Assembly (NCBI GenBank): GCA_977030845.1
Contig: OZ365109.1
Location: 52,204,001-52,268,000, forward strand
Direction of reading: 5' to 3'
Source: Fimbriosthenelais zetlandica
Taxonomy: Eukaryota
Length of the DNA stretch: 64,000 bases
In this document: piece by piece, positions 1 to 7,580 of the stretch
Numbering within the stretch: the first letter of the stretch is position 1
Layout of the letters: the number at the start of each line of letters is the position of its first letter
Translations under genes and position numbers: made by a program
Notes under the pieces: generated by a model
What the model was told of the DNA's origin: nothing
The model's database searches: none
Seen by the model: only the letters and a program-made list of their open reading frames with translations

Positions 1-912
1 TGAATGCAATGCACTGATCATACCTTAAACTAGATATGTATTCAAGTTGAGCTGCATAACTTAAATAACAAAGGTACTACTCAACATGCGAGTGCTGAAG
101 GATCGTGTGTGAAAAGGTTTATCACAAAGTGCACCAAACTTACCCCAATTCACCCTCACCCATATCTTAAATCTCACTTAATATTCTAAAACATGAACAT
201 ATCAAGGCCTCCACAATCCGGGGCAGAAATTTTGACCAACTAACTTAACATTTTCTCCATCGTTCAGGGACAGGTTCATAACTTCCCGCTTCCATGGAAC
301 AGCCACAACAATATGCATACATTGTATAGAGATAGAGAAGAGACTTCCCAACCACATCCTTTGATAACTTGACATTTAAGGCTCTTAATTAAAAAGTGGC
401 AACTCTTGCACATCAGCAGTGACATAATTTATTCAAATAATGCTGTGACAGTATATTATTATTACCAAAGGATGTTAACCCATGAGAAAAGAGGATAATG
501 AAATACACTGAAACAAAACAGACGGAATTCATTGACCTTCCCCGCCCAAAATGAGTCACCTCAAGGGGGCTGAAGATAATTTAGAATAACCTTATTGTTT
601 TTTACATATCATATTTAATGGTGATTTCATGGGATAACATCCAGATGGTAACATCAAATATCCTCAGTTTACATCCATATAAACAGAGAAGACACAGAGG
701 CAGTGTTTGACACACAGGTCAGTGCCAGTGCAAGTGTGTATTAAGAGAGATCTTAATAGGTGTGACAGAAAGTGGTGTCCACATTGAGTTTGGTGAGGCT
801 CGCGCAGGCACAAATAAACAGGCATACGCGTGATAGCCCTTTCTTGCGGGGTGCCACATAGGAGCCCGCAGTAGTATGCGAAACTTGCTTGGTTACGCCA
901 ACTTTACTTTAC

Positions 913-1070
913 CTTGGAAAGCTTTCATATGTGCCACGGCCAAGCGAAGAATGGTTAGTTTATCTGGTTTTCGAGCGAGGGTACTACATGCTGGTACCAT
1001 GTCACATAACTCATTAACATATGTTGACATCTTGCTACGTCTACGCCTTTCAATCTCACAGTGGCTTTCC
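913..1070 (-). CDS. ARNT: ARNT bHLH exon, copy b (divergent mutually exclusive variant)
   Basis: 158 nt; acceptor ...ttttgctattatag| at 1071-1072, donor |gtaaag at 912-911; phase 2 in, phase 1 out; encodes (R)[52 protein letters not shown](G). Confidence 0.9.
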
Positions 1071-1713
1071 CTATAATAGCAAAACAGGGCGCAGAGCTCT
1101 TTGTCAATAGCAATCACATCAATATTATAGTTGCCACCTATCTGTCATGCTTTAACCTGATGGGTGATGGTGGGCACTGCTCAGAACCCTTTTGTTCCTT
1201 GCTGGGTGAAGCAGTTGATGTGGGATTCACTGATGATACATATAATGGTAAGATTGCTGTAGAGAAAATGGAGACACACAGAAGTCAACAAGCATCGAGA
1301 CAGGAACATCACCAAGGGACGTCATGGATGAAAGAATTACTCCAAAAATTCTTCTTGAACAGAAGCCCCAATGAACCGTTTTATTCTGACAAGATGAAGC
1401 CCATGCAGTCTTTCCTGTCTCAATGCTTCATAGATTATATGTTTTATAATAATGCATTAAGGCTTGGCAACAGAAACAGGCAGAATCTAAAAACATGCTG
1501 TAAGATCAGCTACTTGCTCAGCAATCGCCCAGTCAGGGAGTCCAAAAAAGAGGGGTTAGAAGGGTCAGGGGCCCATATGCGGAAAAAAGACAATATGATG
1601 AAAAAAAATAATAAAAAAATTATGCAGAGGTAGCTGCGCAAAGAGTAGAATAGACTAGGAAAGCCCCAGTAGATGATGCCCATGTAGGTGGAGAATGGGC
1701 GCTTTGGTTTTAC

Positions 1714-1871
1714 CTCTCATGTTTTTCATATGTGATACTGCCATACGGAGTATAGTTAGCTTGTCGGGCTTGCGGGCCAAGGTGGAACAGGTGGGAACCA
1801 TGTCGCAAAGTTCGTTCATGTATGCTGTCATTTTATTGCGGCGACGCCGCTCTATTTCACAATGGCTCTCT
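1714..1871 (-). CDS. ARNT: ARNT bHLH exon, copy a (canonical variant)
   Basis: 158 nt; acceptor ...gtgtttctgtttgtag| at 1872-1873, donor |gtaaaa at 1713-1712; phase 2 in, phase 1 out; encodes (R)[52 protein letters not shown](G). Absent from the ORF track on the minus strand. Confidence 0.95.
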
Positions 1872-4343
1872 CTACAAACAGAAACACAACAACAACGATT
1901 AGGAGGAAGAAACAGGTGTGTAACACACGAAAGTTAGTCATTTTCTCAATGACATAGGTAAAGTGAATGATTAAAATGTTTTGTTTTATTTGGCGGGCCA
2001 AATCTTTTAGGAGGACAGATTATATTTCATTAAATATTTTATAACTAAGAAATATTTCAACACTAGATTTTTTTGACAAAACCCGAAGGCATATGGTGTA
2101 TTTGAAAGTAACTTTAATTCCTTATCGAAATGGGGAAACTTAGTCAAACAGGAAATTCAAAAGAAACCATTTCAGGTGAATAACCCCTCTGAGACTGAAA
2201 GAGAATAGGTGTGACTTATAAACAGAAGAAGTTGTTTCTTGAATTATTATGGCACAAAGAAACAGTTCATGCATCAAAGATACCAAGCATGTACAGGAGA
2301 AACAACGTGTCAGACACAAGGTATTATCCAAAACAGAGAAATATGAAACGATTAGATTAGTAGACAATCCAAGTGGGAAATCTGAAGTTGACAATAACAG
2401 CAAACTATAAGGGTCTATAATAAATATTCTAATCAGTAGTTTGAACATAATTCTGGTTTTTGAAAAATAACTGAGGATAGGCTACCTATGAAGAAACAGC
2501 AAATAGATGGCTGCAGGCAGAAATGTTTGCATTCTTCATTAGAAAAGACACTGGGTGAGTAAAATGGCAAAAAAATAAAGGAGGATATAAAGAGATGAAA
2601 GGCAACACTTGGCTCTATGAGACCGATAGCTAATTAAGATAGACATAAACAGTAACTGCCAATTGCTGGCCTTATATATGTATATATTGGAACCAAGTAC
2701 AAAATGATATTATTGAAATAATGCTTAACTCTTCTAAGTAGTTTTAACATCAGAGCCTATGCCAAGCATAGTTTCCAAATTAGGAAGAATAAACAGCAAT
2801 TTCTCTCTCAGGTGACCCGTTGATATTTTTTGGTTATGGGTAGAAATAATTAAACATGAACCTTGCTTTTAAAGGAGACCAGGGGAGCAAAATTAAGTTG
2901 GGATCCATGCAATGGAAATCACCGATTTTTTCTTTGGATGTTTCAATGAAGGCAATGCTCAATAAATCGTTTACATAGAAATGGGAGGTACTTAAATCTA
3001 TACTCACAATTTCCACTGTCTTCATTTATGAAATACAAAGGATACATTCTATATGAACAAGATTTTAAAGGGTAACGTTGATACTCTCCATAGGCAAGGA
3101 GGCTCATGATCGGGTGTGACCAAAAGCCTTAGCGGATTGAAATCAAAAGTTACATCAACGCTTCAGATGTGGTCAAATTTGAATTCTGTTGGTGGGAATG
3201 ATTTTTTATTGAACCGGCCGCTCATTTTTGTTTCATTTCAATAATATCATTTTGTATGCCTGAGATGGACTGGAGAATTGTGGACAGTACAATTTGGCGC
3301 TCTCAGATTAAAATACTGTGTGGATCTATATGTGGAAAATTATATTACAAGGGACCTTACTAAGTGTGTATATATATATGTTAATGAATCTAATACACAA
3401 CCCAGGAGAGATGGTGACTTGAGAAAGATTCATCATGCAAAGAGAAACCATTACTCCAGTAATCATGAGACATACAATACACAGGGAGAGAACATTGTGC
3501 CACGATGAGTATCTAGCGATTTCAGTCCCTGCTTGCCTCTAGATATCATAATTATTATTACACATACTTTCACCTACACTTTAAATATGTAATTCAATGT
3601 ACGATAACAAATACCAACACTAGGAGAGATTTTCTTTCAAAGAGATACGAAAGCAAATCTATAGATCTACGATATGTTTAAAGACATTAAATCAATAACA
3701 ATCTGTCATGGTTATTCGATAGTAAACTGCAAGTTATTCAATTAAATGAGTGCAGGACTGAATTCGTGCTTGACCATCAGGTCAAGGTAAAGGATGGTCA
3801 ATCCATATGTACAGTATCAGATCTTCTGGTCACATAATTATATTCCGGTCATTTAACAAAGCTTCAACAATGAATCCATAGACCATTATATCAGGTTTCA
3901 TAGGTAAGCTTTTGATGAGATTTATTAGCATTTTTGACCATCCTTCCTTTACAAATCTCTAGGTCAGTACAGGAAGAGCAGACCCACATTCAGGCCTGTA
4001 ATGATATTATCTTCTCGTGAGAAATATTGCAGAATCAAATTATCCTGTTCAAAAAGGTACACCCTCGAGAGAGGGGATACTCCGTAAAGTGTAAAGGTGT
4101 ATAAAACCAATTCCTTTCAAGACCATTAGATTTTCTTACCTATAGTTATTTCTGTAGTTGGGATTATACTGGAAAGGGGTTACCCATTTTTTCATAAAAA
4201 CGGCCCGCTTTTCCCGTTCAAACCATTGCTCCTATTGAGGAAGCTAAACTCACATATATGTGAAAATGCACGATGCAGTCTCAAAAATACCGAAAAGATG
4301 GCTGGCACCTACTTCAGGTGTTTCTATATTGCGCTGTACTTAC

Positions 4344-4355
4344 AAGTATCGCTTC
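4344..4355 (-). CDS. candidate 12-nt ARNT microexon (adds KRYL before the basic region)
   Basis: gtgtgctacctttcctaaag|GAAGCGATACTT|gtaagta; frame-preserving in the phase-2 intron; strong donor, weak AAG acceptor. Confidence 0.2.
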
Positions 4356-5219
4356 CTTTAGGAAAGGTAGCACACAACATCGGTAAACGGTCATCAATAC
4401 AGGTATTCTATATGCTTGTGCAGACACCATTTTCTCTAAAGGCTTTTGCGTTTTAACTTGAAATCATTCATTATAATAGTATGAGATTGGCATGTGGGAA
4501 AAATACACATTGGCGATATCGCCTATTTCACCCAAGGTTTCGTAAGTTTTTGTCTTTTTACTTAAAACATGCACGGCAAAATTCTTCTTTTACATAGCTA
4601 TATATCCTTACCTCGATTTAGGATTATATTCATACATACATACTGGATATTTGTTTTTCATTAGTGACATTCCTTTATACACATTTCCAAAAATATTGGA
4701 ACATAAAAACGGATTTATGAAGTAACCAATATGGTTTTTGTTTCCAGTGTTTTTCTTTCGATACTCCATTTACATAAATAAAACTGAACATAGCCAAAAC
4801 TCCTTTTCCAAAAGAACTGTAATAACTCACAAAAAGAAACAGAATACTTGTATTGTACAGGTAACATAGAAACTGAGTAGATGGCTCGATTACTGCTCTT
4901 TTGTTTTCTTTTTGTCAAACAAAAATGCCAAATGATTCACCGATTGCAAAGGCTGATGAAAAAAAATAAACCTTCAATGAATGGAATCTCTGCGCATTGT
5001 GAAGTTATTTTCCCACTTTTCGAAACACTTCCTGGCATTTAAACACATTTAATTAATGAAGAAAGGGTCCTGACATAATCATAGCACACTTTTTAATGTG
5101 TATCACCATCAATTTCTGAGGTTTCAGTACATAAGGTGTACAGGATTGGAAAGAGAAGTGAGTAATTTAAGTGATATTAAATTTGAGATGTTTTCAAATG
5201 GAAGGAGAATTCAACTAAC

Positions 5220-5297
5220 CTAGCCAGCCTCTCCTTGTCGTTAGGATCGTTCTCTCCACTCCCGTAGACTCCACCCTGGGACTCATCATCATCCGAG
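5220..5297 (-). CDS. ARNT: ARNT acidic pre-bHLH exon (SDDDESQGGVYGSGENDPNDKERLAR)
   Basis: 78 nt, symmetric phase 2-2; acceptor ...gattcag|, donor ag|gttagt; resembles the vertebrate ARNT SDDEQSSADKERLAR segment. Confidence 0.9.
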
Positions 5298-5299
5298 CT

Positions 5300-5352
5300 G
5301 AATCAATCAGTATCAATCAGTCAGTATAAATCAATCAACCAACCAATCTATC
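5300..5352. repeat. degenerate (AATC)n/(TGAT)n microsatellite forming the 3' splice region of the 5220-5297 exon
   Basis: aatcaatcagtatcaatcagtcagtataaatcaatcaaccaaccaatcta on +. Confidence 0.6.
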
Positions 5353-7522
5353 TATTCCTGGCACAAACATCACATATTAATAACTGATGAAAGGATAATC
5401 GATCAGTCTAAAATGTGTATTGTGAATTATCAGCATTTTCAAGGTAATAAAATAAAGAAAGATGAAGAAAATAAACTATATGTATGAGACAGCGAAAGTC
5501 AGGAACCTGGTGAATTTGGGGTAAGAAAGGTATCAAGAACGGAATTTGGATGAGCTTACTCATTACTGTGAAAGGAACTGAAGTTTATACCTCGTTGGAT
5601 TATGAACTTGGCACTCATTAAAAGTATAGTGCATCAGGTGTTAGATTCAATAGGCGATAAATGCATGAAGAACAAATGATTTAGGTTTTATATTGAACTA
5701 ACTATAGTCATGACGTAGGATAGGGTTAGATTTGAGAGAGATGTGTTCTGGTTGAATAGCCAATACAGGATTCCCAATGGGTTCACAGAGGCGTGAAGAT
5801 GATAAAACATGAACCTCTCCAGCCTGCTTCTATATTGGGAGTGTACAGGATTTGACACCCAATTCATAATGTTGGTCAAATAGTCAATGCTAATATATCC
5901 GGTACATATTTTTTCTCCGAAATGCTAAGTGTTATCCATACTGAGATACTTCATATTTCAGTATTTTACATGAAAATTAATGTCGAAATGCAATATCCAC
6001 TATCCATGTCTAAATCTAATACTATTTAACTTTAAAGGTATCCACAAAATTTATTCAACACATTCTCACTTATTTATGAGCTATCAGATGCTGTCATATG
6101 AACCTTCGGAGTTCTAGTTCAGTTCCATAATTCAGTTCCATCTCTTTTATCCAATTAGCCAAATTGCAATCATCTAAAACTTAGATGTAAAATCTCCCCT
6201 CTACACCACCCAAACGTGTCATGAAAGCTGTGGGGAGGATAAATACAAGTGTTGGTAATGGCCATGTTTAGTGAGTATATGTGTAGGAGAGTAACTATAG
6301 ATCGCACTTAGCATCTCCACATCAAACTCTGTGGCTGTGACCAAGAGTCAGTCATTGTCTCTTTTCCTTGACTATAATCCACATATCAAGCCACAGCTTC
6401 AGCCAGAAGATCTATGATCAAACATGTCAATTATCATGGTATATGTCCTCAAGTAGTGCCTCAGTTCGCACGTGTAGCAGGAAACTGGTACAATGATCAT
6501 CAAGGCATGAGGCTTTTGCAGACACACAGTATGTACTGCAGGATACCATGACTTATGTTAGGCATTCATTCATTCCGTTTTTAGCACACACATTACGTTA
6601 TTAGAATCCGACTTGGAAGACCTTTACCCGAACCATGTCTATTTTGTGGCAATTCTTTGTTTCGTATACAATCCTAAATAGTGAGTCATTCTTTCTTTCC
6701 AATTAGGGGGTCATACGGTGGCAGAATAAGGCAGAGAAAAGGCAACATAATACCAGCTAAACCGAAAATGAAACTTGTCGGCTTTTTTTCCACACTGAGT
6801 AAATTCTCAGTGGTGTTCATTTATTAAAAGCCAATATTTTCTCCTGCCTGTATACCTCACTAGGATTTTTCCATATATTACTTCCCATAAAGTTTCTATT
6901 TCACTCTAGGGATTTCAAGCCAAGACGTGAAATTTTCTCCCTTAAAAAAGGAAGTCGTGAGGAGGGAATACATTTTCTGGAGTAAGACAATTCCCGAGTT
7001 TATCAGTAGATTTGATTCCTGACTAACCATGTGGCCGCCTTAGTCAGGCTCCATCCCTCAGTCGTACTCTCTCCACGTGTGACACAATGAGTTGGAAACA
7101 AACACGCCCAGCACCTTCCCTACTCTGACACTTTGGACTTAAAGCTTTCAAAATGAGTGTTGTGCAAATAGCTATCAGCCATATCAGACACTCCGCTGTT
7201 GAGTTCTCATTGCTTTTGCCTTATCTATCATACTAGTTTTGAAATCTTTTTATAAATATTTTTCTCCCATACTAAATTAAGAGTATACATATTTCATGAT
7301 CTGGTGGTTCCTCTTATCGACAATGGCAGAAAGATATATTATTTATAGATCTGGCAATAACTCTTTATTTAATCTTTTCCACTGTGATTTTTGGTTGCTG
7401 TTTTCTTTCTTCAGAGGTTAACATGAAGGCTCGAATAGAATATGTACAAGACTTCACCTTGTGATTTCATTTATAAATCGGCTTTCTAATGAGATGTAAA
7501 AATCATCAATACATGTACTTAC

Positions 7523-7580
7523 TCTCGCCCACTGCCAGCACCGGGTATCTTCCTCTTGCGACCTTTGTCAGGAGTTGGTG
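7523..7580 (-). CDS. ARNT: ARNT exon with basic NLS-like motif (PTPDKGRKRKIPGAGSGR)
   Basis: 58 nt; acceptor ttttattcttttag|, donor ga|gtaagt; phase 1 in, phase 2 out; joins in frame to 5297 (GA|C = Asp). Confidence 0.88.

What the first reader, a model, noticed from the sequence alone, without database searches (positions are those of the whole stretch)
913..1871. ARNT has two tandem, apparently mutually exclusive bHLH exons (switchable DNA-binding/dimerisation domain)
Seen: two 158-nt exons with identical phases (2 in, 1 out), 643 nt apart. 42 of 52 full codons encode the same residue, but 30 of those 42 codons differ synonymously, so the duplication is old and both copies appear to be under purifying selection. 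Double inclusion (316 nt) or double skipping shifts the frame. The basic region ([11 protein letters not shown]) is invariant. The 10 substitutions are N>S, T>S, A>T, M>V (helix 1), T>A (helix 1/loop), M>L, S>A (helix 2) and NMR>AFQ (linker to PAS). Established: ARNT is the shared partner of HIF-alpha, AhR, SIM/Trh and NPAS proteins; mutually exclusive bHLH exons are known from TCF3 (E12/E47). I know of no such arrangement for ARNT but could not search. Inference: one locus makes two ARNT hubs with similar half-site recognition but different partner or homodimer preference. Copy a has the stronger 3' splice site, so copy b is probably tissue- or condition-specific.
Basis: partly seen in the sequence, partly recalled or inferred. 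Interest (0 to 1): 0.9.

Follow-up and report, generated by a model that had tools for sequence, protein, structure and literature searches.

The report
Two alternative bHLH exons in ARNT
This worm-like animal's ARNT gene, the shared partner of the hypoxia, dioxin and neural bHLH-PAS factors, carries two tandem versions of the exon for its DNA-binding and pairing domain and uses one or the other; the pair is older than the annelid-brachiopod split and has not been described in the papers I could search.

Summary
Two 158-nt exons lie on the minus strand (1871-1714 and 1070-913). Both have AG/GT borders and the same phase. They share 42 of 52 residues, and 30 of those 42 codons differ synonymously.

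No RNA run of this species was served. A relative's RNA assembly holds two 216-nt contigs, one per exon, with identical spliced flanks on both sides. That is direct evidence of one-or-the-other use.

The same a-then-b pair occurs in Owenia (annelid), Lingula (brachiopod) and a metagenome scaffold. Lingula RefSeq already lists equal-length a- and b-isoforms. Dimorphilus and Intoshia keep only b. Two molluscs and a schistosome have only a.

The b exons form one clade, and both copies are under strong purifying selection. Including both exons or skipping both gives early stops.

The DNA base-contact residues His, Glu and Arg are unchanged. Three positions separate a from b in every species compared: N to S/T/G/C, I/M to V, and M to L.

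Different partner preference remains untested, and the claimed stronger 3' splice site of a is not supported.

A 2017 survey counted these extra bHLH copies as recent linked gene paralogs. A conserved 12-nt microexon sits just upstream.

Verdict: a real new member of a known kind, comparable to TCF3 E12/E47.

The parts
7523..7580 (-). Upstream ARNT coding exon (58 nt; ..PTPDKGRKRKIPGAGSGR-D), basic NLS-like stretch
   Evidence: tblastn match to the Owenia ARNT N-terminus; ttttag| acceptor and |gtaagt donor read; the frame joins exon 5297-5220
5220..5297 (-). Exon just before the bHLH exons (78 nt; SDDDESQGGVYGSGENDPNDKERLA-R), ends in AG (2 nt of a codon)
   Evidence: the DKERLAR motif matches ARNT of other animals
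3008..3019 (-). 12-nt alternative microexon ACAGTGGAAATT (adds QWKL between ..LAR and ESHC..), flanked by aag| and |gtgagt
   Evidence: Exact match to the 12 extra bases in the spliced flanks of both X3 contigs; absent from X4-X6 transcripts; inserts at the same position in other species
1714..1871 (-). bHLH exon a (canonical ARNT type: [24 protein letters not shown])
   Evidence: spliced into the relatives' mRNA contigs in all six runs
1071..1713 (-). 643-nt intron between exon a and exon b; holds a 17-nt hairpin (1290-1306/1412-1428)
   Evidence: too long for steric exclusion; only about 25 nt upstream and 8 nt downstream of exon b align to a relative's unspliced contig (X4 record 8)
913..1070 (-). 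bHLH exon b (derived type: RRRR[STGC]KM..YV..VP[AS][11 protein letters not shown])
   Evidence: spliced 216-nt contig in relative's run X3 with the same flanks as the exon a contig; orthologous b exons in Owenia, Lingula, Dimorphilus, L001-L004

Best explanation
The window holds the 5' part of a lophotrochozoan (probably annelid) ARNT gene. Its single bHLH exon was duplicated in tandem before annelids and brachiopods diverged. The two 158-nt copies are spliced in a mutually exclusive way, giving two full-length ARNT proteins that differ only in the bHLH domain.

Exclusivity is enforced at least by reading frame. 158 is not a multiple of 3, so transcripts with both exons or neither carry early stops and should be removed by nonsense-mediated decay. 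The choice itself is presumably made by splicing regulators, as in TCF3 (inferred).

Both isoforms keep the GTG half-site contacts (the equivalents of His94, Glu98 and Arg102). They differ at clade-fixed positions: the residue right after the last contact Arg (N versus S/T/G/C), a helix-1 core position (I/M versus V), a helix-2 position (M versus L), and usually the loop start (T versus A/S), S versus A in helix 2, and the last residue before the PAS linker (R versus Q).

The likely consequence is altered dimer stability, partner preference or DNA-backbone affinity rather than a new half-site (inference, about 50%). Exon a is the ancestral form and, in the samples seen, the major one. Exon b can serve as the only ARNT bHLH, since Dimorphilus and Intoshia retain only b.
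For: - Anatomy and counts.
- Relative's RNA (run X3): a 216-nt contig on 912-1070 (depth 7.65) and a 216-nt contig on 1713-1871 (depth 19.9). Both have identical loose ends: upstream exon plus microexon on one side..GTGNTSTDG exon on the other. This is a bubble whose branches are exactly the two exons.
- Window versus that relative: exon a has at least 10 synonymous and 0 nonsynonymous codon changes; exon b has 14 synonymous and 2 nonsynonymous.
- Tandem a-then-b exons with matching borders are in Lingula L005 (6603-6758, 7262-7417), Owenia L007 (30282-30437, 30930-31085) and scaffold L002.
- Lingula RefSeq XP_013385136.1/XP_013385138.1 carry a and XP_013385137.1/XP_013385139.1 carry b, with equal lengths.
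- Full-length b-type mRNAs: P0008, P0156/P0274, P0193/P0273.
- b versus b across phyla shares 46-50 of 52 residues with pN 0.04-0.10 and pS 0.73-1.16 (synonymous sites near saturation). a versus b within a genome shares 39-42 of 52.
- The b clade has support 89/98.
- Base contacts H94/E98/R102 are cited from PMC9674253.
Against: - No RNA of the window's own species could be examined, so use of exon b here is inferred from a relative at about 87-91% exon identity.
- The spliced b form was assembled in only one of six runs. X4 shows exon b only in an unspliced contig.
- Contigs cannot exclude rare a+b transcripts.
- No conserved docking or selector RNA structure was found, so the selection mechanism is unknown.
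- All a/b replacements are conservative, and no binding data exist, so a functional difference is not shown.
- The downstream PAS exons lie outside the window.
Confidence: 0.82

Rival explanations
1. The two isoforms are biochemically equivalent. The pair is kept because the two exons are under different splicing or expression control (subfunctionalisation by regulation only), not because the proteins behave differently.
For: All 10 replacements are conservative and the DNA-contact residues are identical. Dimorphilus and Intoshia manage with b alone, and molluscs and a schistosome with a alone, so either form can carry all ARNT functions.
Against: Three positions are fixed-different between all a and all b exons over more than 500 million years (N versus non-N, I/M versus V, M versus L). 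b orthologues are as conserved as a orthologues or more so. That pattern points to selection on the specific b sequence, not just on having a second exon.
Confidence: 0.3
2. Exon b is not used in this species. It is an intact but silent relic, or is used only at trace levels that are removed by decay.
For: No RNA of this species was available. In five of six relatives' runs only the a form was assembled as a spliced transcript.
Against: Exon b is intact with good splice sites. It shows 14 synonymous versus 2 nonsynonymous changes against a close relative. It is spliced in that relative at about 28% of ARNT contig depth and is conserved across phyla.
Confidence: 0.06
3. The two bHLH sequences belong to two tandem ARNT paralogous genes. 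This is how Bao et al. 2017 read the linked ARNT bHLHs of Capitella, Helobdella and Lingula.
For: PMC5381572 lists 4, 2 and 4 ARNT bHLHs in these species and calls them recent linked paralogs.
Against: Only the 158-nt exon is duplicated, 643 nt away, with no second set of flanking exons. Spliced transcripts share identical upstream and downstream exons. The Lingula isoforms come from one locus. The b exons are orthologous across phyla, so they are not recent.
Confidence: 0.02

Closest known systems
TCF3/E2A E12 and E47 (mutually exclusive bHLH exons in vertebrates; PMC6795145, PMC6120717)
   Same: A tandem-duplicated exon encodes the whole bHLH of a shared dimerisation partner (class I E protein there, class II bHLH-PAS partner here). 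One of the two is chosen, giving isoforms with different DNA-binding and dimerisation domains.
   Different: It is a different bHLH family and an independent duplication in a different lineage (vertebrates versus annelids plus brachiopods). The regulators known for TCF3 (hnRNP H1/F, PTBP1) are not tested here. E12 and E47 have documented functional differences; ARNT a and b have none yet.
Lingula anatina RefSeq ARNT homolog isoforms X1-X4 (XP_013385136.1 to XP_013385139.1)
   Same: Orthologous a and b exons in the same order, about 500 nt apart. Automatic annotation already models a-only and b-only proteins of equal length.
   Different: It is a different phylum. It is an automatic gene model, not a described finding. 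I found no paper that discusses it.
Linked 'ARNT paralogs' of Capitella, Helobdella and Lingula in Bao et al. 2017 (PMC5381572)
   Same: The same taxonomic pattern as found here: extra ARNT-type bHLH sequences in annelids and a brachiopod, and one in each of five molluscs.
   Different: There they are interpreted as recent, lineage-specific gene duplicates. The evidence here shows one old exon duplication inside a single gene. That the sequences are the same was not checked directly, because the supplement is not held.
Mammalian ARNT isoforms 1 and 3 (alternative 15-residue exon 5 next to the basic region; PMC8944900)
   Same: Alternative splicing next to the ARNT basic region tunes the shared partner. 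The 12-nt microexon found here lies in a comparable place.
   Different: That is a cassette exon outside the bHLH core, not a replacement of the bHLH. No homology to the microexon is shown.
Vertebrate ARNT and ARNT2 paralogous genes
   Same: Two versions of the common partner with almost the same bHLH and different tissue use. Heterodimers with NPAS4 differ in DNA affinity (PMC9674253).
   Different: Those came from whole-gene duplication and differ along the whole protein. Here only 52 residues differ, and the choice is made by splicing.

Membership tests
ARNT (class II bHLH-PAS partner) | bHLH domain with the ARNT-type basic region, including the His/Glu/Arg that read the GTG half-site | tested here: met
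   Both exons match Pfam HLH and solved ARNT chains at E about 1e-20. H, E and R lie at exon positions 3, 7 and 11 in both. Contact residues are from PMC9674253.
ARNT (class II bHLH-PAS partner) | [quoted passage not shown] | not testable with these tools
   The downstream exons lie beyond the start of the window. In relatives the exon joins to ..GTGNTSTDG.., and full-length a- and b-type proteins carry PAS domains.
ARNT (class II bHLH-PAS partner) | Groups with ARNT and not with BMAL/cycle | tested here: met
   In the tree both exons fall inside the lophotrochozoan ARNT group (94/87) and BMAL lies outside. Best named hits are ARNT homologues.
Mutually exclusive exon pair from tandem exon duplication | Adjacent homologous exons of the same length and phase with intact splice sites | tested here: met
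   158 nt each, phase 2 in and 1 out, AG/GT borders, 66% nucleotide and 81% residue identity.
Mutually exclusive exon pair from tandem exon duplication | Mature transcripts contain exactly one of the two, between the same flanking exons | tested here: inconclusive
   Met in a relative (X3 bubble) and in Lingula gene models. Not testable in the window's own species, because no RNA run was served.
Mutually exclusive exon pair from tandem exon duplication | Joint inclusion or joint skipping is non-productive | tested here: met
   a+b gives a stop inside exon b. Skipping both gives a stop after two codons, using the relative's next exon.
Mutually exclusive exon pair from tandem exon duplication | A known exclusivity mechanism (steric hindrance, U2/U12 incompatibility, competing RNA pairings) | tested here: not met
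   The intron is 643 nt, so there is no steric block. All sites look U2-type GT-AG. No conserved docking or selector pairing was found. Only frame and decay remain, plus unknown regulators.

The most novel reading that the evidence does not exclude
In annelids and brachiopods the hub of the whole bHLH-PAS network exists as two splice-selected bHLH versions that have been kept apart for over 500 million years. On this reading the two versions partition the class I partners (for example HIF/AHR versus Sim/Trh/NPAS-type, or heterodimer versus homodimer). The choice would be co-regulated with a 12-nt microexon next to the basic region. This would be a splice-level equivalent of vertebrate ARNT/ARNT2 and a second, independent E12/E47-like switch in a different bHLH class.
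Probability: 0.3. Interest if true: 0.75.

Novelty: new member of a known kind. Interest (0 to 1): 0.6.

Why it matters
ARNT is the obligate partner of HIF-alpha, AHR, SIM, TRH and NPAS proteins, so any change in its dimerisation and DNA-binding module acts on hypoxia, xenobiotic and neural programmes together.

An old, strongly conserved pair of alternative bHLH exons shows that some animal phyla diversified this hub by splicing rather than by gene duplication.

It also corrects the count of 'ARNT paralogs' in lophotrochozoan bHLH surveys.

It offers a natural experiment: a-only, b-only and a+b lineages differ at three fixed positions, which can be used to find which bHLH residues set partner choice in bHLH-PAS dimers.

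Tried and rejected
- RNA of the species itself: none was listed for 600-5400 or 913-1871. Only runs found by a related protein could be laid.
- Metatranscriptome runs X1 and X2 added only the a form.
- A third exon copy in the window: none.
- Docking/selector pairings: 13 inverted repeats in 1-5300, none linking the intron before a or b to a common site. Relatives' contigs show no conserved intron sequence beyond about 25 nt.
- A 190-residue ORF on the plus strand across the a-b intron (1061-1633): no Pfam match, treated as chance.
- A divergent 'RRRR[VI]KMA.YF' group of ARNT bHLHs looked like a possible further exon type. These are simply rotifer ARNTs from Seison and Adineta.
- Tubulanus ARNT could not inform on exon structure because the locus is intronless.
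- Crassostrea and Octopus isoforms were not on record for a locus look-up. Pinctada and Batillaria were used instead.
- Same-species a/b mRNA pairs among the fetched metatranscriptome proteins: none found.
- Literature searches for ARNT mutually exclusive exons found nothing. One call failed on term length.
- Structure prediction was not run. Only monomers can be modelled here, and the open question concerns dimers.

Full report
**What is there.** On the minus strand the window holds the 5' part of an ARNT gene.
- Exon 7580-7523 encodes ..PTPDKGRKRKIPGAGSGR.
- Exon 5297-5220 encodes SDDDESQGGVYGSGENDPNDKERLA and ends with AG, two bases of a codon.
- Two 158-nt exons follow, at 1871-1714 (a) and 1070-913 (b). 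Each has a ..tag acceptor and a gtaaa donor, and 643 nt separate them.
- Their translations differ at 10 of 52 positions.

Synonymous sites are saturated and the nonsynonymous proportion is 0.146. Both peptides are clear HLH domains, and their nearest solved relatives are ARNT chains at E about 1e-20. There is no third copy in the window. The PAS exons lie beyond the window's start.

**Are the exons used one or the other?** No RNA run of this species was served. Six runs were offered through a related protein.

In run X3, from a relative whose exons are about 87-91% identical to the window, there are two contigs of 216 nt.
- One lies on 912-1070 at depth 7.65; the other lies on 1713-1871 at depth 19.9.
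- Both continue on one side into the same 30 letters, which read ..KEKLAR plus 12 further bases.
- Both continue on the other side into the same 27 letters, which read ..GTGNTSTDG, the start of the conserved ARNT linker.
- Two equal-length paths that leave and rejoin the same sequence exactly at the exon borders are what an assembler makes of mutually exclusive exons in mRNA. Genomic DNA cannot give them, because both flanks are spliced.
- By depth, b is about 28% of ARNT message in that sample.

In runs X4, X5, X6, X1 and X2 only the a form was assembled as a spliced transcript. X4 holds exon b only in an unspliced contig. So b is sample-dependent and, where seen, the minor form. Contigs drop rare variants, so its absence in those runs proves little.

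Including both exons runs into a stop inside exon b. Skipping both gives a stop two codons into the next exon. Only single inclusion is productive.

**How old is the pair, and is it selected?**
- Against the close relative, exon a shows at least 10 synonymous and no nonsynonymous codon changes. Exon b shows 14 synonymous and 2 nonsynonymous changes, S to C at position 12 and L to M at position 21.
- A search of 1.84 billion representative proteins with the b peptide returned many b-type sequences. These include full-length proteins from metatranscriptomes and run assemblies (P0008, P0156/P0274, P0193/P0273), Dimorphilus gyrociliatus, Intoshia linei, and Lingula anatina 'isoform X2'.
- Genomic loci show the same a-then-b arrangement in Lingula (about 500 nt apart), Owenia fusiformis (about 490 nt) and a metagenome scaffold (about 1.3 kb), with borders at the same codon positions.
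- The Owenia b exon seems to use a donor 3 nt further on. The a exon of scaffold L002 has GC at the donor position.
- Dimorphilus has only b, fused to the upstream exon.
- The whole ARNT loci of Pinctada, Batillaria and Schistosoma mekongi hold only an a-type exon.
- b orthologues share 46-50 of 52 residues across phyla. a and b within one genome share 39-42. All comparisons have pN 0.03-0.16 against pS 0.73-1.16, at or near saturation.
- In a tree of 36 bHLH sequences the 14 b-type rows form one clade (ultrafast bootstrap 89, SH-aLRT 98). It lies inside the lophotrochozoan ARNT group, with Lingula b next to the annelid b's. With 52 columns the tree is coarse, but it agrees with the diagnostic residues.

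The duplication therefore predates the annelid-brachiopod split. Whether molluscs and flatworms lost b or branched off earlier cannot be decided here. Notes from other windows of this genome suggest an annelid; I did not test that.

**What differs between a and b.**
- ARNT reads the GTG half-site through H94, E98 and R102 (PMC9674253). These are positions 3, 7 and 11 of the exon and are the same in a and b.
- Position 12, next to the last contact arginine, is N in the a exons of the paired genomes and of the mollusc and flatworm loci, except T in scaffold L002. It is S, T, G or C in all 14 b exons.
- Position 18 is I or M in a and V in b.
- Position 43 is M in a and L in b.
- Usually also different: position 27 (T versus A/S), position 46 (S versus A) and position 52 (R versus Q).
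- By alignment with Max, recalled from memory and so only a lead, position 18 is a buried helix-1 core position of the four-helix bundle.

The most likely effect is on dimer stability, partner preference or backbone contacts, not on the half-site. This is inference and nothing here measures it. Lineages that live with only a or only b show that either form can carry the essential functions.

**How exclusivity is achieved.** The intron is far too long for steric exclusion, and all sites look like ordinary GT-AG sites. I found no pairing that could act as a docking and selector system, and no conserved intron sequence beyond the immediate splice-site neighbourhood. Frame incompatibility with decay of the wrong products is the only mechanism the sequence itself shows. 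Active choice by splicing factors, as shown for TCF3 (PMC6795145), is the expected rest.

**A second alternative element.** The 12 extra bases in the X3 flanks occur once, exactly, in the intron at 3019-3008, between aag| and |gtgagt. This microexon inserts QWKL between ..LAR and ESHC.., three residues before the first DNA-contact histidine.
- It is present in both X3 contigs and absent from the X4-X6 transcripts.
- Other species have 4-residue (RAAM) or 6-residue (NVQGLR) inserts at the same point. P0180 and P0276, from one 90% cluster, differ by it.
- A perfect 22-nt inverted repeat brackets it.
- The only run with the spliced b form is also the only one with the microexon. That hints at shared tissue-specific control but comes from one sample.

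**What is known already.**
- Mutually exclusive bHLH exons are established for TCF3 E12/E47 (PMC6795145, PMC6120717).
- For ARNT I found no paper describing such exons in the held library. That library lacks most subscription journals.
- Lingula RefSeq carries isoforms X1/X3 with a and X2/X4 with b, of equal lengths.
- Bao et al. 2017 counted 4, 2 and 4 ARNT bHLHs in Capitella, Helobdella and Lingula against 1 in each of five molluscs. They described linked ARNT paralogs as recent, species-specific duplicates (PMC5381572).
- The taxonomic pattern is the one found here. A second Lingula scaffold with a b-type partial model (P0269) would explain a count of four as two exons on two scaffolds. This is my inference; the paper's supplement is not held.

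**Verdict.** The reading as mutually exclusive, selected bHLH exons is supported by transcripts of a relative, by gene models and mRNAs in other species, and by deep conservation. It is still unshown in this species' own RNA. The functional reading is open. It is a new, independently evolved member of a known kind (E12/E47-type switch), visible in databases but apparently not described.

Noticed in passing
window 3008-3019 (-), with arms at 2698-2719 and 3235-3256: A 12-nt microexon (adds QWKL just before the ARNT basic region), conserved base for base in a relative's mRNA and alternatively included. A perfect 22-nt inverted repeat brackets it and could loop it out, or could be transposon ends.
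   Followed up: partly
L006 (Dimorphilus gyrociliatus) 2563-2718; P0022 (Intoshia linei): These reduced annelid-lineage genomes keep only the b-type bHLH. In Dimorphilus it is fused to the upstream exon (intron lost), so b can be the sole ARNT bHLH.
   Followed up: partly
L008 (Tubulanus polymorphus) 1001-2953: The annotated nemertean ARNT (650 aa, a-type) is encoded without any intron, so it looks like a retrocopy. Whether an intron-bearing parent gene with a and b exists was not checked.
   Followed up: no
L002 41-196 and L007 30930-31085: The a exon of metagenome scaffold L002 has GC instead of GT at the expected donor. The Owenia b exon appears to use a donor 3 nt downstream (161-nt exon, frame kept).
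   Followed up: no
window 1290-1306 / 1412-1428: A 17-nt, 94% complementary hairpin lies inside the intron between exons a and b. Conservation was not testable.
   Followed up: no
window 1061-1633 (+): A 190-residue open frame lies antisense to the a-b intron and overlaps the start of exon b. It has no Pfam match and is probably chance.
   Followed up: partly
P0152 (Cordylochernes scorpioides 'ARNT', 1154 aa) and P0002: These gene models contain the whole N-terminal part twice with identical bHLH sequences. They look like assembly or annotation duplications, not alternative exons.
   Followed up: no
PMC5381572, Table 1: The same survey lists 2 E12/E47 bHLHs in Helobdella and in Lingula. This may be worth checking for exon-level duplicates as well.
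   Followed up: no
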